A program made the position numbers and the translations under genes. Of a stretch of DNA of 64,000 nucleotides, positions 20,881-62,345 are shown one piece after another. The stretch lies in contig CM119383.1 of NCBI GenBank assembly GCA_051294905.1, positions 2,852,001 to 2,916,000 on the forward strand, written 5' to 3'. This DNA is from Botryllus schlosseri. Lineage: Eukaryota. The stretch's first letter is position 1. Every line of letters starts with the position of its first letter. The notes under the pieces were generated by a model, which was not told where the DNA came from, did not search any database, and saw only the letters and a list, made by a program, of their open reading frames with translations.

Positions 20881-21769
20881 ATTGGTGGATAATCCGAGAG
20901 TTATCAACGAAAAACTCAAATATCTCCCCTTCTACTAGTTGGAATTAAGTTAAATTTGTTTTGCATCGTCTTTGAAGACAACTTAACAATTCCATTGGGT
21001 TGACGGAAAAATTTTAATATTTTTTCAATTTTCTTCAGTTAATTAAAATTTTTAATTGGCTCTGCGGAGGCTTATACTTCTTAGAATTGAACTAAATTTG
21101 GTGTGCAGCGTTTTTTAGGGTAACCTGACAATTTAATCAGTGAATGGCTGGAATCCGGAAAAAAGTTATATTTGAACAGCCTTACTGTACAATTTGTATT
21201 GTACTGTACTATTTGAATTTTTCGTTGATAATTGTCGGATTATCCTTGATCGTTGGGTAATCTGAGAATGATCATAGAAGAACTCAAATAGAACTCAAAA
21301 CTCTCTATCATATCGAGAAATTAATGTATGAGTGCTTGACAGTTGATGCAGTCACTGAGGCAGTGGAATACAGAAAGGCTTGGTGTCCGTAGCATAATAG
21401 GCTACAGCTAAAACTCCAGAAATTTGGATCGGCAACCGGAAATAGCGCCTTTAACTGGGTCACCCAGATTATGCGTTTTCAGCATTGAAATATGATACTG
21501 GTTCGTTAATGGTAAAGTGTGTGCATATAAGACGTCATCTTATTCATTGACAAACCCATGTACAGTGTATACCCATCGAAATATTCATTTTGCGATCTAT
21601 CGGGAGCTGTGCAATGTGTATCCATTGAGAGACTTCGGACAGAACGTGCAAGAGCTGTAGTTGCCGCTTATGGGCACTGCCGGGACCAGTGTGCATTGCT
21701 TCGCGACTTACGACTCGCAACGCGCAACTCGCGATGTTGCGTCGCGAGGTCAGTGTGCAGAGGCCTTTA

Positions 21770-22543
21770 ATAACAAATATCGTGGATCGTAAAAGTTATA
21801 TTTAGTGTAGCTTTATTTTCGTAAAATAGAGGCATTACTACACTTGCTTTTATGCTTCAACATGTATATTCTGCAGACAAAAGAACGGAAAGTAAGTAGA
21901 ACTCAGAGTATGATACTCGGAATTGAAAGTGAAATACAAATACCACTTCTAGAAAGCGGAAAATATATTTCATATATTTTGTCCATAAAGCTTCAGAGGT
22001 GATCTACTAAAACAGGTGTAACGTTCAAAAGATCGGATTTTCCAGATTAGCAGGACACGTCATGGGCTGCTATATTACGATATGATAAGTAATTGCTAGA
22101 TTGCGAAATGGTACTTTCAAATGTTATGGTGGGCAATATTTACTACAATATTTGATATGGGCGACAATGCGGTGTGAGAATAACCAAGCAATCCGGTACC
22201 TAAATTATATTCATTGATATATTTGTGAAAACATATTCGTCACTCCATAACTACTGTGCGCGAAGCGTATCAAAATCTCTGGGCTTTACTTTATTTTTAT
22301 GAATATTAAATGTTGGTACTCCGTGAAAACAGCCCCGAAATTCCTCAGGGTATCTTTCGTATTGGGGAATTAAACTACTTCTACTTGACAAACTGAAAAT
22401 AGCGAAAAGTATGTAGGTAGATCGCAGAATATTACGAAGTAGAAGTAGGGAAAATCAGATCTACTTGAGTAAGTACCAGAAGTAGAGGAAAACTACTTGA
22501 GTACTCCCAAAAAGTAGAAGTACATCGTTACTGACTACCTCTG
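21770..22543 (-). mobile_element. One-ended copy of family H (left arm of the 57040-61775 element)
   Basis: Reverse complement is collinear with ~57040-57830. Ends in TIR tgactacctctg. Confidence 0.8.
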
Positions 22544-39500: not shown

Positions 39501-42500
39501 GGGTAGGATTGCCAAGCTACCTAAATATATCATTCCGGATAAGAGCATACACATCAAGAGGACCTGGAAATTTTACAGACAACCAAACCGTTTATACAGG
39601 TGGATACAATATCATATATCTTAGCTACAAAAATTCTTGTTTGGTTTGCACGGTAGTTTATGTATCTTGTAAACCTCGAACATTATGCTAAAATGCCACC
39701 AGTCACAGACGGTATAGGCTATAATACACAATAACGACGCACTATTATAGGAAATCGATGTGATCCTTGGGAAGCATCTCACGATATGATTCACTGCGAA
39801 GACATGTACGGCTTGATACAGTCATCTGGACCTGTACGAGTTTCCCTCACTATGAATCATGTCAACTCCGCTCGGAAATGGAGCATCAATCTAACGCAGT
39901 TTGCCGGATGGAGAGCAAAAATTGTATTTTTGGAAGAAGAAGATGAGTAAGTTTAGGGATACGGGGACACATAATCAAAACAATTACGAAGATATAAAAA
40001 AGAAAAGGCATGCCGTAGCCCAAGAACTAGAGATTACATGTCATCTGAGCGTTCTTCATCAATCTAGAAGTGAAAGTTTGACCGGGCTTTGTACTAGAGC
40101 AAGGGTTTCCAGACTTTTTATGGTCGTGACCCAAATTTCGATTTGAAAATGTGTTGGGACCTACCTCTCAATTTGGCGTGCTGGTTACTAAAAAAGGGTC
40201 AGAACCTTCGTCCAAAGCAACTCACGGCCTATGTGTGAAGCTGGCGACTGTGCGCAGTAGTAGCAATTACGATCTCGTCAATATCCGTCCTTAGATTACG
40301 AAACACTATCAAGTTTCAAGAATAAGCAACGTATAGGTCTTTTGGAACGATTTCAATTTATGTCCAATCTAAAGTACTGCAACTAGAAACGCGAAACACA
40401 GATAACGATGTATACCAATGATTCCCAACCTTTTTCGACTCATCGCCCCCTTATCAATCTCGACACAAATTCTCGACGTCTTCTTTTGATTTTTATTATG
40501 CTGCCGGCACTTTAACGTTCATAATGATGGCCAGACACGCAGACACTAACCTCAAGTTATAGTAGGTTGCCATGTACAATAACGTTTGGAGCAGAGGTCT
40601 CAAACACGCGGCCCGCGAGAACATTTTGTGGGGCCCGCGACGGGATTTTGGAATTTCAAGTATTCGACAATATATTCAAGTGCCGTAGATCTTTTTTAGA
40701 TTTAAGAACCTAAAGTTCACTCTGAAACTACTACAAACTTCACTATCACATCACTTTTAAAATCTACTATGCGGTAGACGATCAGCTTTTACGTCGCATT
40801 TGTAGTTCCTGGTGATAAAACATGACCCGTTGATGATTCGTGACTTAAAATTGTGATTTGGTTTGGTGCGACCTTTCGAAAAATAACTCGATTTCGGATT
40901 TCGTGGGTGATAAAATAAAATGACTCTATAGTTGAGTCGTGTCAAACGTTAAAATCAAAGAACCTGCGACTCGGAACGCTGACTTGGTAATCCTACGGAC
41001 GCAACGATCTATGAAACTGTCATGGGGAATAGTAATACATCAAAAGGTCGTAGCTTCCGTTGCGTATGGCAGGGTTGTAATGACTCGAGTCATGACTCGA
41101 CTCGAGTCACGATTTTCTGATGACTCGACTTGACTCGAGTCAATCTGTGTGTTGACTCGACTTGGACTCGAGTCATTGCGCATGACTCGAACCAAGTCAT
41201 TGACTCGAGACTCAGACGGCCAAGACCGACATTTCATTGTAATTCCGAAGCCAACACACTATTGAGATTTCGTCTGTTGGAACTGGTACTTGAAAATGCG
41301 ACCAGAAACTGCTAAAAGTGAGGAAAATTAATATATTATAAATGCGAAACATTCGATATCACCAAACAGAGTTATAAAAGTGGGTTTTAAAAGACTTTAA
41401 CTGGAAACTGAGCAGTCAACACAATGACTTGGACTCGGACTCGAGTCATAATTCCATGACTCGGACTCGACCCTCTGCTCGCTGACTTGGACTCGGACTT
41501 GACTCGGCGGTGAATTGAAATGACTCGACTTGACTCGAGTCAAAACTATAAAAGTGACATTGACTTGTGACTCGGAGCCTTGTGACTTGGTTACAACCCT
41601 GGCGTATGGCAGAGGTCTCAAACTCAAATGTGCTCGCGGGCCAGTTTTCCAGTTTTGACGACGCCGCGGGCCGCAGCATTTGTAGGGGTATTTTATGCCT
41701 TTCCAAGTAGGCCTTATTTGGCGGGAATGAATTGTCCTATTGAAAGTGCGCCGATCCAGCAGACTGACAGTAAACACAGATCGTCAAAATTTGATTTACT
41801 TTTGCATCAATTTAGGCCTGGCACGAAAAGAATCATCACATATATAACTATTTGAATGGAATTGTTGTTGTACTTGATATATATTAATTATAAGATATAG
41901 ACACCATATGGGCGGACAAATATATGGTGCCATCACGAATGCTATCGGGTTATAATTTTGCAGCTACTATGAATATTTTGAATTTAACAGATTGATAATA
42001 GAGACTGTTCTGATATCAAAACATTTTTAGGTTGAGCATTGTAATTCCAATCCAGGACTCAGGTATACTTCTGATAAGTAGGCTATTAATCTCATGGCCA
42101 AATATCTTCAAATATAGGAGCAGAAAAAAATATAAATATAATATAAATATATTATTGAATGTGTCCTAGTGATTGAAATGTCGGAACGCCGAACGGCCCA
42201 TTGTTGTTACATCGTTGGAGCGTACCACCACGGTACTCGGTACCTTTAAGTGGCCTTAATAATATGATTTAGCGACCAAAGATGTAACTAACAGATTGCC
42301 AATGGTTGCCATAACTACTTGCTTAGTTAGCGAAATACCAAGCTGCGACCTTCTGATCTATTACTATTCCCCTGATACGCGATTAGTTTGTTGCGTCCAT
42401 GGTTCTAACAAATTCGCGGCATTCCGAGTCACTCCGAGTCCACTCGAGTCATTTTCATTTTGTCATCGAGTTAGCCCGAGTCTGAGTAATTCTAAGAAAG

Positions 42501-45500
42501 GTCGCGTCCAAGTCCAACTCACAAACTTCAGTCATGAATCGTCTTAGGGTCAGGTTTTGTCGTCATGAATTGGAAATGTGGCGTAATAGTAAATCTTCCA
42601 CTGCATGGTAGCGTTTGCAATTGATGTGATAGTGATGTTTGATGAATATAGTTTCAGGCTTTCGGAGCAATGTCAGAGGGAATTTTCACTTTATAAGCTG
42701 AAAAGATATATATGACACTTAGATATTGTCAAATTAATAAAAATCTAAAATGTCGCCGCGGGCCGCCCAAAATGCTCTGGCGGGCCGCGTGTTTGAGACC
42801 TCTGACGTATGGTATATAGCTATTTAATCAGGTCAGCAAGGAAACCATGGCCATGCTGTGGCCTACGTGACGTATAGTTGGTTGCATCCTGAGTGTTGTT
42901 TGTTCTACTTATTCATGTTATTATCGGTGGCGAGTAATGGTACTATCCACAGCTGTAACCCCAATGGATTCTTCGGCGATTGAACATTTCTATTCCTGGG
43001 GTCCGTACTCCGTAGACCCTTTCGGGGTACGAAGCATCACATCAGGGGGTACGAGATGCATTGTGGAATTATGCATATATGATGTGGAATATTTTCTGGG
43101 CCAATTTATTCAACTGGAAAATATTCTTCGCGCTAGTCGCGATTTTATGTGAATGGGCTTTCTGATTTTAATATAGGTGCCATCGCAAATTGTGTTAAAA
43201 ATGGACTGGGAGTACGAGAAATCTTATTGAAAGCTCAAGGGTACGATCGCTAAAAGCTCAGGAACCAATGCTATTTCTATGGCACAATAATGATTATATT
43301 TTAATTGTTCTTGATCTGTTCCGATAATACTGGAAGGCAAATCTTACGCTGATTTAATTTGACTTTGACAATGACAGTAAACACAGCCTACTTAACAGGA
43401 CTATATAAGAAACACGGGTTATGCTATACAGCAGTGGTCGGGAACCTATGGCTCGCGAGCCACATATGGCTCTTTTGGGTATAAGATGTGGCTCTTTGAC
43501 ATGTTTTTAATTTTGTACCTAATTTTATCGATATTGCAGCAACTTGTTAGTAAATTATCACAACGGACAGAATAGTTATTCTTGTGGCAGCATAAACATT
43601 TATTTGAGAGGTCAAGACAGTGCCGTATCCAGGTTAAGTGCTCGGACCCCTTTACAAAATGCTCAAATTTAAGTTGCTGTCGCGGCAGCGACCAATATCC
43701 CTCGCGAATTCGATGTACTCCGCATCGCGCTCTATGTAATCTTGGATTGTACCACACGTTATAGGAGATCAAAGAGAACTAGGACGTCTATATGACAATC
43801 TAGTTTTCAAATAGGCTACACATTGTCGGCCTGATCTACGCCGAGAAATGAACTGTTTTGGAAGTGACATTCCAATTACAAATCGAAATTACAAACCACG
43901 CTTGGCTATCCACGTTCTTCATTGATAAGTAGCTTTCTAGTAATTCCGTTAAAATGTAGGCGTTTAGTGCAACGTTTATGTTACCGCCGAATTGAGAAGT
44001 CGATCAATATTTAGATTTTCGGAATCAGTGCTGCAGTTATATTAGATAAATATCAATTATTTTAAATTCTGAGCTATTTACGAGGAATTGCGCTACCACA
44101 GGATGATTAGTAGCCTACCAGATTTTACAGAAAAAATACGGCGCCCACGACTAATCCAATGTAGTGAGTTCGAATTTGTACTACCATGACGTCACTAATT
44201 TTCAATTGTGACGTAACACTTGATTGACATGTATGGCTCTTTGGGACTTGAAATGGAAAATATAGGTCTAAAATGGCTCTTCAGAAGAAAAAGGTTCCCG
44301 ACCACTGCTATACAGCGCTCAAATGCTCTGATATCAGATCGAACTTAAGTAAATTACAAAATATTCTACATAAAATTGAGGCAAGTCAAAGGTCCACCAG
44401 CTGCAATGTTATAACCCGACAGATTTGACGATGTCATGATATGTCCTCTCGCATGATGTCTATAACTCAATATTTTAACAAAATATGCCCGGCGCAAAAA
44501 CAATTTTATTCAAATATTTGAAAATGTGATTTTTCCGTGCCAAGCGTGAATAGTATAATAGTAAATGACATTTTCACGATGTTTGTGGAATGCCTGTCTG
44601 CACGGTCCGTCAAATAAGGCCTTCTTGGAAATTATATGCATTGAATATACTACCCGTATATTATTGATGCTGCGGCCCGCGGCGTAATCAAAAACTAAAG
44701 AAATTGGCCCGCGAGCACATTTGAGTTTGATACCTCTGGTATAGAGTAATATCTTGTGTACCATTCCTCAGAGGTCTTGTCTTCTTCTATGAAATAAAAT
44801 GTTCAGAAATGAGCCTCCGATACCATCCGCTTAATTGGCATTATTGTAATAGTCATTGGTATTTAATTTTCGTCGGCGCGACCCCAGAGAATAGGCAAAC
44901 GACCCCATTGCGGTCGCGACCGCTAGTTTGGGAAACCCTGTACTAGAGGCGTAGGGGCCCAAATCAGACCGCAATTTCAGTCCGAGAGTTCGGATCAAAT
45001 GTACGCGAAAATGAATTCATTTCAGTTCCTATAATTTCGATGGTCTAACACGGGATGGATCAAATACCAACATCTTGTACCCGAACATGATAGCTACAGA
45101 CGAGCAAAATATTCTTTGGATTGTCGAGACCTCTGAACAGAGTCAACGAGGTTTTGAGCTTCAACTGGAAATCGAACTTGGTGAGAAGCATTCAAAGCTT
45201 AGGTTGAGTTGCCGAAATCGTATTTTCTTGCTGGAAAATGAAATCGATTTTGTATAGTACTGATGAAAACGTATTTTGCAGATGGTGATGATTGTGCATC
45301 ATCGCCATGTCTGAACGATGGGATATGTATCGACAAAAACTATGACTTCGAATGTAATTGCACAGCGGAATGGGCTAATAAAAGTTGTCAAACGCGTGCG
45401 TATAGATATTAGTTGGAACAACACCACGTCCGTAGCTTGCTCGGTATATTGTTTCGTCAGCTCGCCTAGACCCTGATGTGAATTGCATGCCTCACGAGAG

Positions 45501-54500: not shown

Positions 54501-56604
54501 AAATTGCTAATAAACCAATGATGATGATGATGATAAAACCAGGATTAAAATTTGAGACAACGACGTCATAAGGGAGACGATGACGTCAGAACTTCCAAAT
54601 CCAAAATTGGTCGGAACAGCTTTTTTCTAGTATATCACCGTCAGCGATTTTCTACGCAACTCATCCCACATAAATAAGATAAGAAAAGGTTTGAAGTATA
54701 ACCAAATGAATATAGCTTTAAAATCAACTTTACCGAGATGCTGTTGTTGCTCGGTGCCGTTTTGAGTTTACACTTTGTTTACAGATCTTCGCGGTTGTCG
54801 CTGAATCCACATCAGTGTTCTTTCTATTCATAACTTTCGTGATACTACTGAGGGTCAGGAAACGAACCGGCGGAGAACGAATTCCCATCCAGATAAACCT
54901 ATCAGTGTCTTTGTTGCTTCTACATTTCTGGGTGCTATGGGGAGATATCGCATTGGAAATACCGGATTTCTGCAAAGCCATCGGGGTTCTCACTCATTTC
55001 TTTCTGCTTTCGTCAGGTATGGAACCATGTTTTGATATACGAAAAGTTGTCTAAAATCACGTGGTTCATTAGCCTAACGCACTAATTTCATCACCAAATC
55101 CAGTGGTGCTGAGTCTTACTATGAACGCTGACGGTGATTGTTAATATAATGAGACTTACTTTTCCTCTGTCACTCAGCGTTTTGGATGATGAACGAAGCC
55201 AATTTGCTATTCTTCAAAACCAGTAAATGGGCGGCTACGTCTACGAAACGCAGCAAGATCGTTGTCGTTACAATGTGTATCGGATGGGGAATTCCGTTTA
55301 TAATAGCGGGGATAACTGCAGCAGTCGGCTTCGGTCGAGGAGTGTACATGGAAAAAAGCGACTACCTGACGCACGAAGATTATGAAAAAGTGTCTATTTC
55401 CAAACAAGGACCGCAATACAATCATTGCTTGCTGAGCTCCAAAAACGGAACGCGTCTAGCCTCTATCATACCAGTAGCAATTATACTCGCATACAACCTT
55501 GTAATGGCAGTGAGAGCCGTGATATTCGTTCACACTAAGCGGGCAGAAGTCAAAAAGTACATGCCGTCCAACCAGGATGAAAAGACCAAGAGTAAAATGA
55601 TCTCGGAAACTCTCGACAACGTATTGCATTTACTGAAAGTGATATTTCTGCTTCTTCCGGTGCTTGGGGTACCGTGGATCCTCATACTATTATCAAGTGA
55701 GTTGCATATCATTTGCGAGCAATGCAGCTAAGGCGGCCTACTCAAATTACGAAGACTTGTCTCTATAATCACGGAAAGAAGAAAAATGGTCCACTCCGAA
55801 TAGCCTTATTATACGACTCTGTGTATACTTATAGTTGCGTAGTCCGGTGGAAATAAAACCTCAAATTCTTACTTAGCCGCAATAGAGCTGTTTCCAAGTC
55901 AAGCGAAAGATAAAATCAAACTGATGATCAGTGTAGATTGTGGAGATGCGTGACAGACTTTCGGTACCAATCGCCAATGACAGATTTCAAAATTGCAAGA
56001 TTCAAATTAGCGACTATATAATAGCCAAGAAGAAATGATGGTGCGACAAATAGGTAGGCCTGCAATGTTAGAAAATTACAACCCGTTAAAAATAACTACT
56101 TTGACTCCCACAAGCAATTGAGAACTCCAAAAAATACAGATATTGCTATATTGACTGCCTTTTATACTTTGGTTCCGTATATCTAGCATCACACACACGA
56201 TAACACCATGTATGCTATAGATTGCCATCGTGTCATACGATCTGACATGTAATATTGCGTACATATTTTATGTTTATAGACCTAGCTGAGTTATCATGAT
56301 GCGCGATTTTTTAACAGATTGGGGAAGCGAATCCATACAACTGAGCTTCCTATACGTAAACACTTTGGTGAGTGGATTGCAAGGAGTGTTCATATTTCTG
56401 ATTTATTGCGTTGCCGACACCAAAGTGCGGGGTGCTACAAGGAAATCGATCGCTACTCTCAACTCTATGTTGCCGAGCATATCCGATTCTCGATACGGTA
56501 TTAGCAAGCAAAGGCGCGCTGGAGGAAGTACCGACTTTATAGTGGAGTCAGGTGGTTCTGCGTCCCGTACTGAGACGAGACACAGCTCAACGTCGACACG
56601 TTGA
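34241..56604 (+). CDS. Adhesion-class GPCR, ~1362 aa: SP-EGF-like-FN3-FN3-CUB-like-EGF-FN3x4-short GAIN/GPS-7TM
   Basis: 20 phase-consistent GT-AG exons: 34241-34310, 35067-35183, 35319-35497, 35799-35928, 35991-36175, 39464-39599, 39751-39946, 45026-45180, 45282-45395, 45461-45561, 45783-45975, 46662-46780, 48783-48957, 49144-49343, 51982-52157, 53123-53280, 53336-53982, 54785-55016, 55178-55696, 56318-56604 (4089 nt). FN3 motifs GLEPYTPY, GLSPFTNY, DLMPYTNY, PSRPRNL...VKWETP. EGF DDCASSPCLNDGICID. GPS-like CVSNHTTVFAVLL. Family-B-like TM motifs THFFLLSSAFWMMNEA, GWGIP, LLPVLGVPW, GLQGVFIFLIYC. The first exon (MLKDGVFVIIAISCAEG) is the least certain. Confidence 0.92.
36460..36540 (+). repeat. 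(GAT)n tract, probably the tail of an extremely 5'-truncated LINE
   Basis: About 20 GAT units preceded by aaattgctaataaacca, the same 17-mer that precedes the (GAT)n tail at 54501-54534. Confidence 0.8.
36803..37919. mobile_element. hAT (Buster-like) MITE in an aGPCR intron, hosting a palindromic MITE
   Basis: TIR cagtgcttct(t/c)aacc at both ends. Flanks gttttgag / gtttaaag (6/8). Confidence 0.75.
37390..37612. mobile_element. Palindromic MITE family A (~220 bp hairpin)
   Basis: Arms ggctgacactcgtcaggggtaatcgtcagcaac..gtagagaat and its reverse complement. Single arms at ~1410-1492, ~4430-4512, ~10912-11005, ~14615-14700 and ~16292-16370. Confidence 0.82.
41070..41601 (+). mobile_element. 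MITE family B, full length
   Basis: TIR cagggttgtaa / ttacaaccctg. Perfect TSD gcgtatgg. Confidence 0.92.
41610..42804 (+). mobile_element. Family C hAT element (inner copy)
   Basis: TIR cagaggtctcaaac / gtttgagacctctg. TSD gcgtatgg / acgtatgg. Confidence 0.88.
43432..44307. mobile_element. hAT (Buster-like) MITE
   Basis: TIR cagtggtcgggaacct / aggttcccgaccactg. Perfect TSD ctatacag. Confidence 0.92.
46150..46560 (+). mobile_element. Degraded LINE: reverse-transcriptase fragment plus 3'UTR remnant
   Basis: 46155-46290 reads YLTVRHEMVSIFNNSSSPHLITCDVPQGSV then frameshifts, matching the CR1/L2 RT motif YLxxRxQxV...GVPQGSVLGPxLF. 46360-46520 resembles 54290-54430 (gccaaggtgggt). Confidence 0.7.
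46453..46494. mobile_element. 42-bp palindromic micro-element, same family as 33496-33536
   Basis: cagatatatctagaact...agttctagatatctctg. Flanks tagctaag / gagccaag (6/8). Interrupts the LINE 3'UTR remnant. Confidence 0.7.
47015..48162. mobile_element. hAT-type MITE
   Basis: TIR caggggccggcgacc vs caggggtcggcaacc with gtgcca subterminal motifs. Flanks caataggg / aaatgggg (6/8). Confidence 0.72.
49745..51866. mobile_element. 2.1 kb hAT (Buster-like) element hosting a family G MITE
   Basis: TIR cagtggttcttgacc vs cagtggctttcaacc, with ccggtccgc motifs at both ends. Perfect TSD gtttagat. Confidence 0.88.
50320..50765 (-). mobile_element. MITE family G, nested
   Basis: TIR taggcttaccata / tatggtaagccta. 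Perfect TSD aacataag. Confidence 0.9.
54085..54534 (+). mobile_element. 5'-truncated LINE (CR1/L2-group-like): ORF2 C-terminus, 3'UTR and (GAT)n tail
   Basis: AHKYDTRASTSSKYH...RSIKY then, after a frameshift, TFKSKYKQLLLHKY, matching the HxYxTR...SIxY...FKxxxKxxLL ORF2 terminus. Ends aataaaccaatgatgatgatgat. Confidence 0.75.
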
Positions 56605-56946: not shown

Positions 56947-59172
56947 TACAATACAGAGAAATCTTACTGGCCTATCTTGAGTACTAGGGAATAGTAGACG
57001 CTATGAAAACATCTGGAGCACTGGCGTTGGCGTGTTAGTGGGAGGTGGTCAGTAACGAAGTACTTCTACTTTTTCGAAGTACTTGAGTAGTTTTCCTATA
57101 CTTCTGGTACTTACTCAAGTAGATCTGATTTTCGCTACTTCTACTTCTACTTCGTAATATTTTGTGATCTACTTACTTACTTTTCGCTATTTTTAGTTTG
57201 TCAAGTAGAAGTAGTTTAATCCTCCAACGGGAAGATAGGCTGAGGAATTTCGGGGCTGTTTTCACGGAGCATCGATATTTAATTTTCATAAAATTTGAGT
57301 AAAGCCCAGAATTTTCGTCGCGCTTCGCGCGCAGGCTATACGGGTTAGCCAGTATGATTTCACGAAAGTGTCAGTGAATATAATTTAGGTAGGGGATTGG
57401 CGTGGTTCCGTTCACACCGCATTGTCGCCCTTCGCAATATCAAATATTTCATCACAGTATATAATATTACGGCTCATCAGAACGTTTGAAACTGATGTTT
57501 CGCAATCTAGCATTTACTTATCATATCGTAATCTAGCAGTCCATGGCGTGTCCTAATCTGAAAAAGTGGATTCTGATTTTTTTTAGTTTTGAAACTGTTT
57601 TAGCATACCAACCTTCGAAACTTTCTGGACTAAAGTCATGAAGTATATGTTCCGATTTTAGAAGTAGTATTTACATTATATTTCACTTTCAATTCACAGT
57701 ATCATGTACTTTGAGTTCTACTTAGTATCAGTTCTTTTGTATGAATAACATACATGTTGAAGTATAAAAGCAAGTGTGGTAATGCCTTTAATTTCTGGAA
57801 ATAAAGCTACACAGTATGGCATTTTTACGATCCACCATATTTTTTATTGATGTTTACTAATCGCGCAAATTGTTTACACCATATCTTATACAACTTCTCC
57901 GTATTCCTCTTCGACTAAACTATACAGGCCTTAATATGGGGAGGGCGCCATACCATGATATTTTCTAAAACGTGCTGTTCGAGTTAAAAGAGGAGCAGTA
58001 TCGCATTTCCTCAGACATGGGGTGATTACTTCATGAATGTAATCGATTGCGATTACGATTACTTCTGAATCACGCGATTACGATTACGATTACGATTACA
58101 GCAAAATCAGGAAGTAGTCGATTACGATTACGATTACATTGGAAAAGTAATCACGATTACTCACGATTACATTTATTTTGCTTCTTAGAACTAATCTTGC
58201 AAGATATATTGAAGACAATATAAGGATTGCGTCGAAAAGGCCTAATGAGATAACAACAACTTCCTCAATAAATGACGCGCTATTTGCTTGTTACGTCATA
58301 ATGTACCCATTGCCCAACTTAATAAGGGACGATTTATCGCATCAAACGATTTGCATTCTTGCCAGTTCCGTAACTGCCGCACCCCAAATTACTTAATAGG
58401 GTGGTGAGAGCGCTCGAAGGGGACTCAAAATTATTTGGTAAAACCAACATAAATTATAGAGTATTTTCGTGAGATCTGATTACCCTGAACATTTTTTTCG
58501 GGCTTCGCGATTTAAATGTCTTTTAATAACTTAATTTAGAAATGCATACATCTCACCCTCATGAAAAAAGTATGCATAATTTACAGGAATAAGCATTTCG
58601 GTGCCGGTCATTATACCGAGCCACGACATACCAAAAGACAAATGCAGTTTCGGCCAACATACCAGATGATATAATGATGAATTACGTGCCCTCAGTTCCA
58701 CTGGTAAATCTGACTATCGGGGGCTTAGAGAGGCCTAAAAATGAATAGTAATATAATGCAATTACTAATATTATTGACAATAATTCAGTCTTCAACTTGA
58801 GAATTGACCACGTTATTGGGGCCCACGACTAACGTTCGGAATGCGGGACGAATTGCTGTTTTGGTCCTTATTCTAGCTACAACCCACGCTATCATGGCAT
58901 ATAAGCGGATGGCCATGGCAGCAGGTTAAGAATTGCGAAATAACGATCGACGCCAGTTTAAGGTGTAGAGTCATATGAGAATAAGATAAAGTGACCATAA
59001 AATTCTGCCTTATTCTTAATGCGGATACTGCACGCTGCCGTCACGAGAAACGGCAAAGAACGGTTCGGTTATGATGTATATCAGCAGCTGTTGATTTTTA
59101 ATGCTTCGTTGTGGAAATTGTAATGTTTTATTTGGCGAGTACAAAATTTCAAATCTTTGCTCGGTGTGAGCT

Positions 59173-60875
59173 CGGATGGTGTGAGCCTCTGAAAGGTTCA
59201 GGTTCGTGTGAACGTGAACCTTTTTGAAAGTTACTGTGTGAACACGAACGTGAACCTCATGACGTCACGTGACGTCGTATTTCTAATTCCAACCCTACAT
59301 TTTAGTGAAGTTATAGCCTATATTAATGTACAACACGATACCAATAGCGATTACTCCGGCAACATAATGCCACTATGCTAAAGTACAAATTGACGTTTTA
59401 AACGTCGGCGGATGTTTCAACTATGGGGCAATCAAATGGTATATTATTCCCATAAAATCAATATCTTCCGTCGCTTTGCCAGCAATTTCGACGAGGACTT
59501 GCAAGGGAATATAAGCTTACGCCTTAACGGTCCAGGCCAGCCCGACAATGTATTCGCCGTCTGGGTATTGTGACGTTAATATTGAGCAGAGTGTAAAACG
59601 GGATTATATACTTGCTACCGATATTACCCCATTACCAAATTATACAGCAGTAGCCAACACCCCAATCCCGCGGATTTTGTTTTTATGGTACAATAAACAT
59701 ATGAAGTCAAGATTGACCACGTACACCTGCTAGATTTTTTACATTAGACAACGATATCAATTCCTTTGATTGGTCGAATAAGCATAATTCTCTGGCTATC
59801 ATGTAGTGCAGGGGTGGCAAACCTTTTCAGCCAAAGGGCCACATTTGATTGACGAACTATTGTGCGGGCCACTAGCCGCGCCATGCGCGAAAATTTTTCG
59901 AAGTTCATGGGTCAATAATGTTGTCACTTGACTATATTGCAGGCCTGTTGTATATCACTGGGCTCAGTTAGCAAGGAATGGACTATTTGGCACCTGGACG
60001 TATCGATATCGAAAGTTTCAACCAACATGCGTCAATCATTTTGTGCCTAGGTTTCATAGTCGACGGTCCTTCTGCGAGCGCGAACGCAAGGTCGCATGTA
60101 TTGAACGACACTTTGTCTCGTCATCGCGAATATAGTTAGACTCAATCTGATACATTAGGTGTTCTTTCATTTTCAGAAAGCGGGTAACAATATTAAAAGC
60201 AAGAAATCGAGTGACAGCATGTTGAGCGAAGCGTATAGAAAATTTTTACTTTTGATAAATCCATCGCAAATTATTCTGCTTTATTGTTGTGCACGAAGAT
60301 CTACCAAAATGTGACTGGCTCAGGGATCTGTCAATGCGTCGGAACTGATATTTTAGTCATCATAGCTCAAGTGTTGCGGCCAGACTAATCAAATTTTTGG
60401 TTGGCCTCGCAAGTTCACAATCTGTGCAATCCATTTTTTGATAATATTACTAATTTCGGAAATTACCGCGCGGGCCACTCAAAACCTTCTCGTGGGCCAC
60501 GGGTTGGCCGGCCCTGATGTAGTGCATCTCGCTATTGATGTTTTGTCAATGCTGGTCAAGCTCACAGCAGAGAGTCACTAAATATTCGCAAACGAGATGC
60601 TGGTTATTTCGAGCAAAATTTTTGAGATTCTCAAGGTGCATGCTCGTTTAGTGTTGATTTTTTTTTATGCTGCCAGCGCCATGCATTGAGTGGCCAGCAG
60701 TAAAAATGCAATAAATTTCAACCGAAGCTGTTATAATGAAGTGAAAACTGTAATATGTGAAAAAAGGTTTACAGCTCAGAACCTACAAAGGTTCGTTTGT
60801 GTACGTGAACATCTAAATTTCTGAGGTTGAATACACACAGAACGCGATGCGTGAACCTCACGTTCACACCATCCT
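59173..60875. mobile_element. Third-level nested element
   Basis: TIR (c/a)ggatggtgtga, with gtgaacgtgaacc motifs near both ends. No intact TSD. Confidence 0.68.
59809..60516. mobile_element. Innermost hAT (Buster-like) MITE
   Basis: Ends caggggtggcaaacc and gggttggccggccctg. Perfect TSD atgtagtg. Confidence 0.85.
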
Positions 60876-62345
60876 TGGTATGTAGGCTACTGCATAGGCC
60901 TGCTTCTCGCCAAACACCAACAGACAAATTGCGTTGAACTATAAGCATAACCTTTAACGAAACATCAATATTACCATTTGCAACTAGGCAGAATGGTGAT
61001 TATTATCCTGCTGCGAGGTAGTGGCGTCTAGAGTGTTGCGAAAACAAGATATGTCGCGCGGCAGGTGTTCTTACAATCACACTACAATGTAAGTCGATTA
61101 TCTATTTACATACAATGTGTGGAAGTGGATACTTCTTACGCAATCATGAGCGAAGCTAGTACTTCTGACGTAATAATGAGCAGTGGTGTTTATAAATCAG
61201 ACGTTCGTGCTATCATTAACCTGGTATAATGTCTTTTCCTTGTTCGCGAATGTTGAGTTTATGTCATAGTCCTTGTACTAATAAAAAGTAATCGCTCTTT
61301 CACAAAGAAATCGATTAGATATGGGAAGTAGTCGATTACGATTACGATTACTTCGGAATTTTTTCGAATGTAATCGATTGCGATTACGATTACTTGAAAA
61401 TGCTGTAATCGTCGTAATCGATTACGATTACTAATCGCGATTACCCCATGTCTGACTATCATATACATCCCATGATGCGGACGAATGCTTATGCTGTCGA
61501 ATATTGGATACTTCCTGGTATGTATCAATAAGAATCAAGCTCTGCAACTTTGGCGTAGCTCAAGTTGCACCTTTTGACACTCCATGTGAACGAATTACGA
61601 TCGTTTTCACAACTACTTACTTACCTGAGTAGATTTAAAGTTAGTCAATTCTACTTCTACTTCAAGTGGTTTTAGGTTGCTCATGGAAGTACTTCTACTG
61701 GTACTTGAGTAGATTTTTTCGTCGCTACTTCTACTTCTACTTGAGTAGTTTTCTTGACTACTTTGACCACCTCTGGTGTTAGTCCATAGCTAACTGAGAG
61801 TTTACATCAATACCACGGTTAGGCCAAGTCAGCAAAGTTGTTGTTATAGATAAAAAGATATATCGAATGCGTACAACTATATATATTCGCCAAACAAAGT
61901 GTTATTGTCACGCCGGAATTGAGTCTAAAGTAACATCAAAAATACTGGGAGTAGAATATTTCGGATCGCTTCCGAGGCGCAGTTTAAAATTATCAATATA
62001 TTGCACTTAGCGAATACATCCATTTGTACAGTGCAGCTCGATTATTCTATTCGAACCGCATTCACGCCTCAGACACTAGGCGATAGGTAGCTTATATGCG
62101 AATATAACTAGATGACAGGATCAAGACTGAATGGTTGGGAAGCGCCTTCTTCCTTCCTTGATGCTCTGAAACAAAATATATGTTCTGTGGATCCATTCTA
62201 GCGGATCGAGACGACACACGGCACGGCGATTGTCGTTGTTTATTTAAAGGAACTATTAGCTGCTTGTCGCCTGGCGGTCCTCAGAATGTACCTTTGCATA
62301 ACTCATAGCTGTTGAAGGGACAAGCGCAAATGCGCATGCGCACTC

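What the first reader, a model, noticed from the sequence alone, without database searches (positions are those of the whole stretch)
57040..61775. Four-level Russian-doll transposon stack between two convergent genes
Seen: 57040-61775 (TSD gtgttagt) contains 58012-61454, which contains 59173-60875, which contains 59809-60516 (TSD atgtagtg). Each level has its own TIR pair, and the outer three have mirrored subterminal arrays (ctactt, cgatta, gtgaac). It begins ~95 nt after the aGPCR AATAAA. The outer TSD is perfect while the middle two are not recognisable, which is unexpected for simple outside-first ageing. Inference: the whole 4.7 kb composite may have transposed recently as one unit.
Basis: partly seen in the sequence, partly recalled or inferred. 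Interest (0 to 1): 0.7.

Follow-up and report, generated by a model that had tools for sequence, protein, structure and literature searches.

The report
Nested hAT transposons, inner trio pre-assembled
This is a real four-deep nest of non-coding "cut-and-paste" (hAT) transposons in a sea-squirt genome, built in two steps: an old outer element, into which a ready-made three-layer composite later jumped as one piece. It is an ordinary kind of transposon nest with some instructive detail.

Summary

A composite did move as a unit, but it was the inner 3.44 kb (layers 2+3+4), not the whole 4.7 kb.
- The layer 2/3 junction recurs at more than 15 loci. Ten of 13 fully sampled copies carry their own perfect 8-bp TSD.
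- The layer 3/4 junction recurs at 7 loci.
- A complete 2+3+4 sibling on contig C10 has its own TSD (CTCTCAAT) and differs from the window copy by about 1.7% per lineage.
- The outer layer-1 arms are older (best matches 86-90%). Its left terminal CA is mutated to GG. No second 1+2+3+4 copy was found.

The "missing" middle TSDs have explanations. Siblings show ATCAATAC (layer 2) and GTACGTAC (layer 3). In the window these were removed by small lesions sitting exactly at element ends.

One result was unexpected. Layer-2 elements occupy the same site, in the same orientation, in five layer-1 copies, and divergences are discordant (hosts 80-83% alike, inserts 93.5-96%). Layer 4 entered the same layer-3 site at least twice. 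This points to insertion hot spots or element replacement.

The scan holds 21 notes that mention nested hAT elements in this genome, so the nest itself is ordinary.

The parts
57033..57040 (.). Left copy of the layer-1 target-site duplication, GTGTTAGT
   Evidence: Identical 8 bp at 61776-61783
57041..58010 (+). Layer-1 left arm. Non-autonomous hAT with TIR CAGAGGTGGTCA, here GGGAGGTGGTCA because the terminal CA is mutated. CTACTT subterminal array.
   Evidence: 86-91% identical to 40 scored genomic copies, all ending at 58010. 7 other copies start CAGAGG. Motif counts.
58011..58011 (.). Single T between layer 1 and layer 2. It stands where uninterrupted layer-1 copies read ATATCAATAC. This is the eroded left TSD or filler.
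   Evidence: comparison with L008, L025 (uninterrupted) and L062, L063, L064 (TSD ATCAATAC intact)
58012..59170 (+). Layer-2 left arm (TIR CAGACATGGGGT, CGATTA array). It carries a subfamily-specific deletion of about 300 bp at 58655-58660, shared with the C10 and C6 siblings.
   Evidence: 97.8% to the C10 sibling and 94-95% to 2+3 copies over the left arm (58012-58660). The terminal 90 bp are 99-100% identical at more than 25 loci.
59171..59800 (+). Layer-3 left arm. The canonical TIR is TAGGGATGGTGTGA. In the window the TAG and the left TSD GTACGTAC are replaced by a 6-bp scar (GAGCTC, 59168-59173). GTGAAC array.
   Evidence: This is the only window-unique indel of 3 bp or more in the inner 3.4 kb.
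59801..59808 (.). Left TSD of layer 4, ATGTAGTG
   Evidence: Copies without layer 4 have one ATGTAGTGCA.
59809..60516 (+). Layer 4: 708-bp Buster-type hAT MITE with TIR CAGGGGTGGC.../...GCCGGCCCTG
   Evidence: 4456 first-look candidates. Free copies 90-93% identical, siblings 96-97%. Family TSD consensus nnyTAnnn in 17 of 17.
60517..60524 (.). Right TSD of layer 4, ATGTAGTG
60525..60877 (+). Layer-3 right arm, ending CCATCCTTG (canonical CCATCCCTG)
60878..61454 (+). Layer-2 right arm. It begins with the decayed right TSD of layer 3 (GTATGTAG, canonical GTACGTAC) and ends CCCCATGTCTG.
61455..61775 (+). Layer-1 right arm. It starts AC, the last two bases of the eroded right TSD ATCAATAC, and ends with an intact TIR (...GACCACCTCTG).
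61776..61783 (.). Right copy of the layer-1 TSD, GTGTTAGT

Best explanation
The stack consists of four different non-autonomous hAT transposon families, but it records only two insertion events at this locus.

First, a 1.29-kb layer-1 element inserted 94 nt downstream of the receptor gene's AATAAA and duplicated GTGTTAGT.

Much later, a 3.44-kb composite landed inside it as one piece, moved by a transposase acting on the layer-2 ends. That composite (layer 2 already carrying layer 3, which already carried layer 4) had been assembled elsewhere and was already multiplying.

So the inner junctions are older than the 1/2 junction, and their TSDs were inherited rather than made here.

The landing site is not random. 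It is the same 8-bp site (ATCAATAC, matching the layer-2 target consensus nTnnnnAC) that layer-2 elements occupy in four other layer-1 copies. The most likely reason is an insertion hot spot (inferred).

Afterwards, small lesions arose exactly at element ends:
- loss of the layer-2 TSD on both sides;
- a 13-to-6-bp replacement at the left end of layer 3;
- CA to GG at the left tip of layer 1.

The most likely cause is abortive transposase cleavage followed by imprecise rejoining (inferred). These lesions hide the middle TSDs and probably immobilise the outer element.
For: SHOWN
- Layer-1 arms are contiguous at more than 10 loci at 86-90%.
- The 2/3 junction is present in more than 15 layer-2 copies. 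10 of 13 fully sampled copies have distinct perfect 8-bp TSDs.
- Layer-2 copies without layer 3 exist (L066, L070, the C11 copy).
- The 3/4 junction occurs at 7 loci.
- A complete 2+3+4 sibling on C10 has its own TSD CTCTCAAT. It shares the ~300-bp deletion.
- Window and C10 carry 44 and 47 unique substitutions in 2649 columns.
- The 2+3+4 copies form one clade in the layer-4 tree and are nested inside the 2+3 clade for layer-3 arms.
- The layer-1 terminal branch is about 0.08, against about 0.014-0.027 for the inner parts.
- Siblings show TSD ATCAATAC around layer 2 inside layer 1 and GTACGTAC around layer 3.
- The same 1/2 junction is found at 5 loci.
- C6 versus C11: the layer-1 host is 80-83% identical but the layer-2 insert 93.5-96.3%, with the step at the junction (Fisher p 8.5e-7).
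- Target consensus is nTnnnnAC for layer 2 (T2 9/11, A7 11/11, C8 9/11) and nnyTAnnn for layer 4 (17/17).
- The genome holds at least 150 hAT dimerisation-domain matches over the Pfam cut-off, many in ORFs above 600 aa.
- Target reuse is seen directly elsewhere in the window (TSD-B-TSD-C-TSD).
Against: - Layer-1 age is inferred from divergence to other copies, which dates lineage splitting, not arrival at this locus.
- The layer-1 tree is star-like, so it cannot show whether the five hosts that carry layer 2 are related.
- The window has no TSD around layer 2, so a canonical insertion here is assumed, not seen.
- Only the 40 best candidates are scored per genome search, so further copies, including another 1+2+3+4, could have been missed.
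- Two junction-bearing loci (C2:516559, C8:18849604) and the right half of C6:5.06M could not be fetched.
- Short-read contigs gave no usable presence/absence evidence.
- No autonomous partner was linked to any layer.
Confidence: 0.75

Rival explanations
1. Element replacement. The layer-1 copy arrived here already carrying an old layer-2 element, as one of a 1+2 composite family. The resident layer 2 was later swapped for a young 2+3+4 copy at the same site. This could happen by capture of an excised element into the double-strand break left by excision of the resident, or by gap repair with template switching.
For: - Same site and orientation in five layer-1 copies.
- In the window, 8 bp of layer-1 target (ATATCAAT) are missing instead of duplicated, with one filler T and exact layer-2 termini. 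That is what end-joining capture into a resected break would give.
- Host and insert divergences are discordant.
- 3 of 13 free layer-2 copies also lack a TSD.
Against: - The other layer-1 copies with layer 2 have perfect ATCAATAC duplications, as expected from ordinary insertion into an empty site.
- The layer-1 arms of those hosts share no derived characters (1 versus 2 sites).
- hAT excision leaves no element sequence at the donor site to guide homologous copying (established knowledge of hAT hairpin chemistry).
- No 1+old-2 allele of this locus was seen.
Confidence: 0.2
2. The whole 4.7-kb four-layer composite transposed recently as one unit on layer-1 ends, which is why the outer TSD is perfect.
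For: - The outer TSD is a perfect 8/8.
- Composites demonstrably do move as units in this genome.
- Divergence of the layer-1 arms does not strictly date arrival at this locus.
Against: - Junction searches found the 1/2 junction at only four other loci. In the three that could be read, the layer 2 present is an older, more diverged type, and layer 3+4 is shown absent in two of them (C11, C14). For C6:5.06M the stretch past the layer-3 site was not fetched.
- The left terminal CA of layer 1, conserved in 7 of 7 other copies, is GG here.
- A perfect TSD is expected in roughly a third or more of copies at 5-8% divergence, and 10 of 13 layer-2 copies keep theirs.
Confidence: 0.07
3. Strict in-situ stacking. 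Four separate insertions happened one after another at this locus, outside first.
For: Each layer has its own TIRs, and layers 1 and 4 have perfect TSDs.
Against: Identical 2/3 and 3/4 junctions, the shared ~300-bp deletion and shared TSDs occur at many other loci with unrelated flanks.
Confidence: 0.02

Closest known systems
Nested or composite non-autonomous DNA transposons that amplify as a unit (MITE 'multimers'; a SINE-derived domain carried along by the MER6 DNA transposon burst, PMC6887750)
   Same: An element that lands inside a mobile non-autonomous element becomes cargo and is copied with it. Subfamilies are then marked by the nested insertion. Here that applies to 2+3, 2+3+4, 3+4 and an old-2+4 composite.
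   Different: Three hAT families are stacked in one mobile unit, and that unit sits in a fourth. The comparison with plant MITE multimers rests on my own knowledge, not on a paper read here. For PMC6887750 only the title and abstract were seen.
Ac/hobo/Hermes-type hAT elements (target consensus nTnnnnAn, hobo nTnnnnAC; Ac TIR YAGGGATGAAA)
   Same: Layer 2 makes 8-bp TSDs with consensus nTnnnnAC. Layer 3 has Ac-like TIRs TAGGGATGG/CAGGGATGG and an 8-bp TSD. Subterminal short repeats are present, as in Ac/Ds. Repeated use of specific hot-spot targets is described for hobo and Hermes in plasmid assays (own knowledge).
   Different: No transposase was linked to these families here. The layer-2 TIR starts CAGAC rather than the usual YARNG.
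Buster-family hAT MITEs such as Mar of Drosophila willistoni (PMC3517528)
   Same: Layer 4 is a ~700-bp non-coding element with TIR CAGGGGTGGC (Mar: CAG(G/A)GGTAGGC). It makes 8-bp TSDs with consensus nnnTAnnn (17 of 17; paper read).
   Different: Different host phylum. The autonomous partner was not identified.
P-element replacement / targeted transposition in Drosophila (own knowledge)
   Same: A new copy of a family ends up at exactly the site of a resident copy.
   Different: That mechanism relies on P-end sequences left at the break. hAT excision leaves hairpinned flanks without element sequence. Not shown here.

Membership tests
hAT superfamily (all four layers) | 8-bp target-site duplication | tested here: met
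   Layer 1: GTGTTAGT here and CCGGTAAC at the C2 copy. Layer 2: 10 of 13 free copies perfect 8 bp, plus ATCAATAC. Layer 3: GTACGTAC in siblings. Layer 4: ATGTAGTG here and about 17 free copies.
hAT superfamily (all four layers) | Short TIRs with a YARNG-type tip | tested here: met
   Layer 1 CAGAG, layer 3 TAGGG/CAGGG and layer 4 CAGGG fit. Layer 2 CAGAC deviates at position 5.
hAT superfamily (all four layers) | Autonomous partner with the same ends that encodes a transposase with the hAT dimerisation domain | not tested
   The genome has at least 150 PF05699 matches over cut-off, many in long ORFs. None was linked to these TIRs because no further genome sequence could be fetched.
Ac family of hAT (layer 2) | TSD consensus nTnnnnAn | tested here: met
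   T2 9/11, A7 11/11, C8 9/11
Buster family of hAT (layer 4) | TSD consensus nnnTAnnn | tested here: met
   T4 and A5 in 17 of 17 TSDs. Criterion as used in PMC3517528.
MITE (layer 4) | Short (under ~800 bp), non-coding, high copy number, TIRs plus TSD | tested here: met
   708 bp, no ORF of 60 aa or more, 4456 first-look candidates
Composite transposon that moves as a unit (inner 2+3+4) | Same internal junctions at other loci, with unrelated flanks and their own TSD at the outer ends | tested here: met
   The C10 sibling has TSD CTCTCAAT. 2+3 copies have 10 distinct TSDs.
Composite transposon that moves as a unit (whole 1+2+3+4) | Same internal junctions at other loci, with unrelated flanks and their own TSD at the outer ends | tested here: not met
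   No other locus combines layer 1 with a 2+3+4 insert

The most novel reading that the evidence does not exclude
Nest-building in this sea-squirt genome may be directed rather than random. On this reading, hAT transposases repeatedly deliver elements to one particular 8-bp site inside another hAT family: layer 2 into ATCAATAC of layer 1 at five loci, and layer 4 into ATGTAGTG of layer 3 at least twice. This would happen either by strong extended target recognition or by homing to, or replacement of, resident copies. Repeated abortive cleavage would then leave diagnostic scars exactly at element tips. If so, nests would be a readable record of transposase targeting and failed excision.
Probability: 0.35. 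Interest if true: 0.5.

Novelty: new member of a known kind. Interest (0 to 1): 0.3.

Why it matters
The case is mainly a caution for annotation. A deep nest does not mean as many local insertion events, and the innermost layer need not be the youngest junction. Composites that travel as units invert the naive "inside = youngest" dating and carry inherited TSDs.

The recurrent same-site insertions and the lesions confined to element tips are modestly interesting for hAT biology (target choice, abortive excision). They could be tested cheaply in a genome that apparently still has many intact hAT transposase genes.

No effect on the neighbouring receptor gene is shown.

Tried and rejected
1. Single-origin 1+2 composite spreading on layer-1 ends. 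Rejected for at least the C6/C11 pair: hosts are 80-83% identical but inserts 93.5-96.3%.

2. Layer 4 copied into the 2+3 lineage by gene conversion from a stand-alone 3+4 copy. Rejected. All 2+3+4 copies carry 2+3-type states at every diagnostic site up to 17 bp (left) and 30 bp (right) from layer 4.

3. Layer 4 ancestral, then precisely lost in the 2+3 majority. Rejected as unparsimonious. The 2+3+4 copy is nested inside a 0.985-supported derived subclade of 2+3 copies, and its layer-4 sequences form their own clade.

4. L035 as an old 2+3+4 copy. Mapping showed layer 4 inserted directly in an old layer 2 at another place with a similar TSD (ATGTAATG), plus a separate layer-3 copy without layer 4.

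5. Coding capacity. Only three ORFs of 60-89 aa, none followed up.

6. Presence/absence in other individuals or species. The runs are short contigs swamped by paralogous copies. Run X16 holds the right layer-1/flank junction, no empty-site joint was listed, and nothing firm follows.

7. Fetching more loci. C2:516559, C8:18849604, the right half of C6:5.06M and uninterrupted layer-1 copies were not read.

8. Literature searches for ascidian hAT MITEs and nested composites gave only general parallels.
Full report
CONTEXT

The window is contig C13:2852001-2916000 of a 495.5-Mb, 219-contig genome. Earlier notes of this scan call it a sea squirt.
- Upstream + strand ORFs hit 7tm_2, and the last one ends at 56604. 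AATAAA lies at 56941-46.
- Downstream, a - strand ORF hits EGF_CA, and another has a membrane-anchor-like stretch.
- There are no N in the window.

THE FOUR LAYERS ARE REAL

I re-mapped them on the fetched loci.

Layer 1 (57041-58010 plus 61455-61775)
- It is contiguous, about 1.29 kb, at more than 10 loci at 86-90% identity. The first look found 5580 candidates.
- Its TIR is CAGAGGTGGTCA in seven other copies. The window's left tip reads GGGAGG. The right tip is intact and GTGTTAGT flanks both sides.

Layer 2 (58012-61454)
- Its tips are CAGACATGGGGT.
- Thirteen other copies have both ends inside fetched loci. Ten of them have perfect, mutually different 8-bp TSDs.
- The TSD consensus is nTnnnnAC.
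- Its terminal ~90 bp are 99-100% identical at more than 25 loci per end, so the family has been active recently.

Layer 3
- It has Ac-like tips, TAGGGATGGTGTGA and CAGGGATGG. In sibling copies its TSD is GTACGTAC.

Layer 4 (59809-60516)
- It is an abundant ~705-bp MITE with 4456 first-look candidates.
- Its TSDs have T4 and A5 in 17 of 17 cases. That is the Buster-family signature used in PMC3517528.

Other checks
- The subterminal arrays (CTACTT, CGATTA, GTGAAC) are concentrated in the terminal 120-200 bp.
- No ORF of 90 aa or more lies inside.
- The genome has at least 150 hAT dimerisation-domain matches over the Pfam cut-off, many in ORFs above 600 aa. None lies in the stack.

THE INNER THREE LAYERS WERE ASSEMBLED ELSEWHERE

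Layer 3 in layer 2:
- In more than 15 layer-2 copies, layer 3 sits at the same place.
- Layer-2 copies without it also exist: L066, L070 and the copy on C11.
- So layer 3 entered layer 2 once and the 2+3 composite then amplified.

Layer 4 in layer 3:
- Most 2+3 copies lack layer 4 and read a single ATGTAGTGCA.
- Four copies carry layer 4: the window, C10:24.11M, C6:0.45M and C6:13.47M. They share a ~300-bp deletion at 58655-58660. The missing stretch is present in the 2+3 copies and in old layer-2 copies.
- These four copies form one clade in the layer-4 tree.

The C10 sibling:
- It is complete and has its own TSD, CTCTCAAT.
- Window and C10 carry 44 and 47 private substitutions in 2649 shared columns, about 1.7% each.

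The 3.44-kb unit 2+3+4 is therefore a mobile composite, and it arrived here as one piece.

THE OUTER ELEMENT IS OLDER, AND THERE IS NO SIGN THAT THE WHOLE STACK MOVED

- The window's layer-1 arms are 80.5-89.9% identical to the six other copies that could be aligned. Their terminal branch is about 0.08, against 0.014-0.027 for the inner parts.
- Searches with both 1/2 junctions found them at only four other loci: C6:5.06M, C11:8.61M, C14:21.96M and C2:0.517M.
- In the three that could be read, layer 2 is an older, more diverged type. Layer 3+4 is absent from the C11 and C14 copies. The C6:5.06M locus ends just before the layer-3 site, so its state there is unknown.
- A perfect outer TSD needs no special explanation. 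At 5-8% divergence about a third of 16 bases stay untouched, and 10 of 13 layer-2 copies keep theirs.
- The mutated CA tip argues against recent mobility on layer-1 ends.
- Divergence to other copies does not strictly date arrival at this locus.

WHY THE MIDDLE TSDs ARE INVISIBLE

Layer 2:
- Uninterrupted layer-1 copies read ...GCATTTCC ATATCAATAC TATCAT....
- The other layer-1 copies that carry layer 2 have ATCAATAC on both sides of it.
- The window reads GCATTTCC-T-[layer 2]-AC-TATCAT. It is the same site, with 9 bp lost on the left and 6 bp lost on the right.

Layer 3:
- At its left end, siblings read ACGTACGTACTAG and the window reads GAGCTC. That removes the TSD and the terminal TAG.
- This is the only window-private indel of 3 bp or more in the inner 3.4 kb.

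Together with CA to GG at the tip of layer 1, every sizeable private lesion lies at an element tip. I infer abortive transposase cleavage with imprecise rejoining. This is not shown.

RECURRENT USE OF THE SAME SITES

Layer 2 in layer 1:
- Layer 2 sits at the same site and in the same orientation in five layer-1 copies.
- The C6 and C11 copies have unrelated flanks. Their layer-1 parts are 80-83% identical and their layer-2 parts 93.5-96.3%, with the step at the junction (Fisher p 8.5e-7).
- They therefore cannot be copies of one transposed 1+2 unit.
- The layer-2 inserts at this site belong to at least three lineages that interleave with free copies.
- Another 2+3 copy sits in a layer-1 copy at a different site, with TSD GTGTGAAC.
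- Layer 1 offers about 55 positions matching nTnnnnAC.

Layer 4 in layer 3:
- Stand-alone layer-3 copies L008 and L020 carry layer 4 at the same ATGTAGTG.
- The 2+3+4 copies have 2+3-type states right up to layer 4.
- They are nested in a derived 2+3 subclade, and their layer-4 sequences are a separate clade.
- So there were at least two independent insertions into one site.

Elsewhere in the window, at 41062-42812, two different elements share one target: GCGTATGG-B-GCGTATGG-C-ACGTATGG.

A hot spot is the simplest reading. Replacement of a resident copy is the main rival.

LIMITS

- Each genome search scores only 40 candidates.
- The read data were short contigs dominated by paralogues. Run X16, another sample of the same species label, holds the right layer-1/flank junction. 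No empty-site joint was listed.

VERDICT

This is an ordinary hAT nest of a kind this scan has noted many times in this genome (21 notes mention nested hAT elements). There are secondary indications of site-directed nesting and of scars at element tips.

Noticed in passing
window 41062-42812: Two different hAT-type elements lie back to back and share one target: GCGTATGG - element B - GCGTATGG - element C - ACGTATGG. The same 8-bp site was used twice.
   Followed up: partly
window 21769-22541: Another, more decayed layer-1 family copy (79% over ~810 bp) lies on the opposite strand.
   Followed up: no
L041, L046, L052 (C9:26.63M, C4:11.60M, C3:26.04M): A further composite subfamily: an old layer-2 variant carrying layer 4 at another site (TSD ATCTATTC). 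It is present at three loci whose layer-4 parts form a tight clade. The L052 copy has its own layer-2 TSD, GTCCCTAC.
   Followed up: partly
L015/L004 (C10:24.11M), inside the 2+3+4 sibling near window-equivalent 58963: After the split from the window copy, the sibling acquired a fifth nested element of ~616-625 bp with TIR GGGCTGTTCAAAAATAAC. It also gained a 71-bp insertion near 60655.
   Followed up: no
L035 (C12:2.645M): Layer 4 is inserted directly in an old layer-2 copy with TSD ATGTAATG, 7 of 8 identical to the ATGTAGTG site in layer 3. Beside it lies a stand-alone layer-3 copy without layer 4.
   Followed up: partly
window 57073-61755 (joints in run X16, and run X18 for two of the three): Contigs join layer-1 positions ~57073-57094 directly to ~61726-61755. 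This suggests very short internally deleted layer-1 derivatives elsewhere in the genome.
   Followed up: no
L006, L007, L017: Three of 13 free layer-2 copies lack a recognisable TSD. In L006 the right flank looks like the left TSD shifted by 2-3 extra bases next to the TIR, another tip-adjacent alteration.
   Followed up: no
genome-wide: At least 150 matches to the hAT dimerisation domain exceed the Pfam cut-off, out of 2620 first-look candidates. Many lie in uninterrupted frames of 600-934 aa, and several are identical in score at different loci, suggesting recently active autonomous hAT elements.
   Followed up: no
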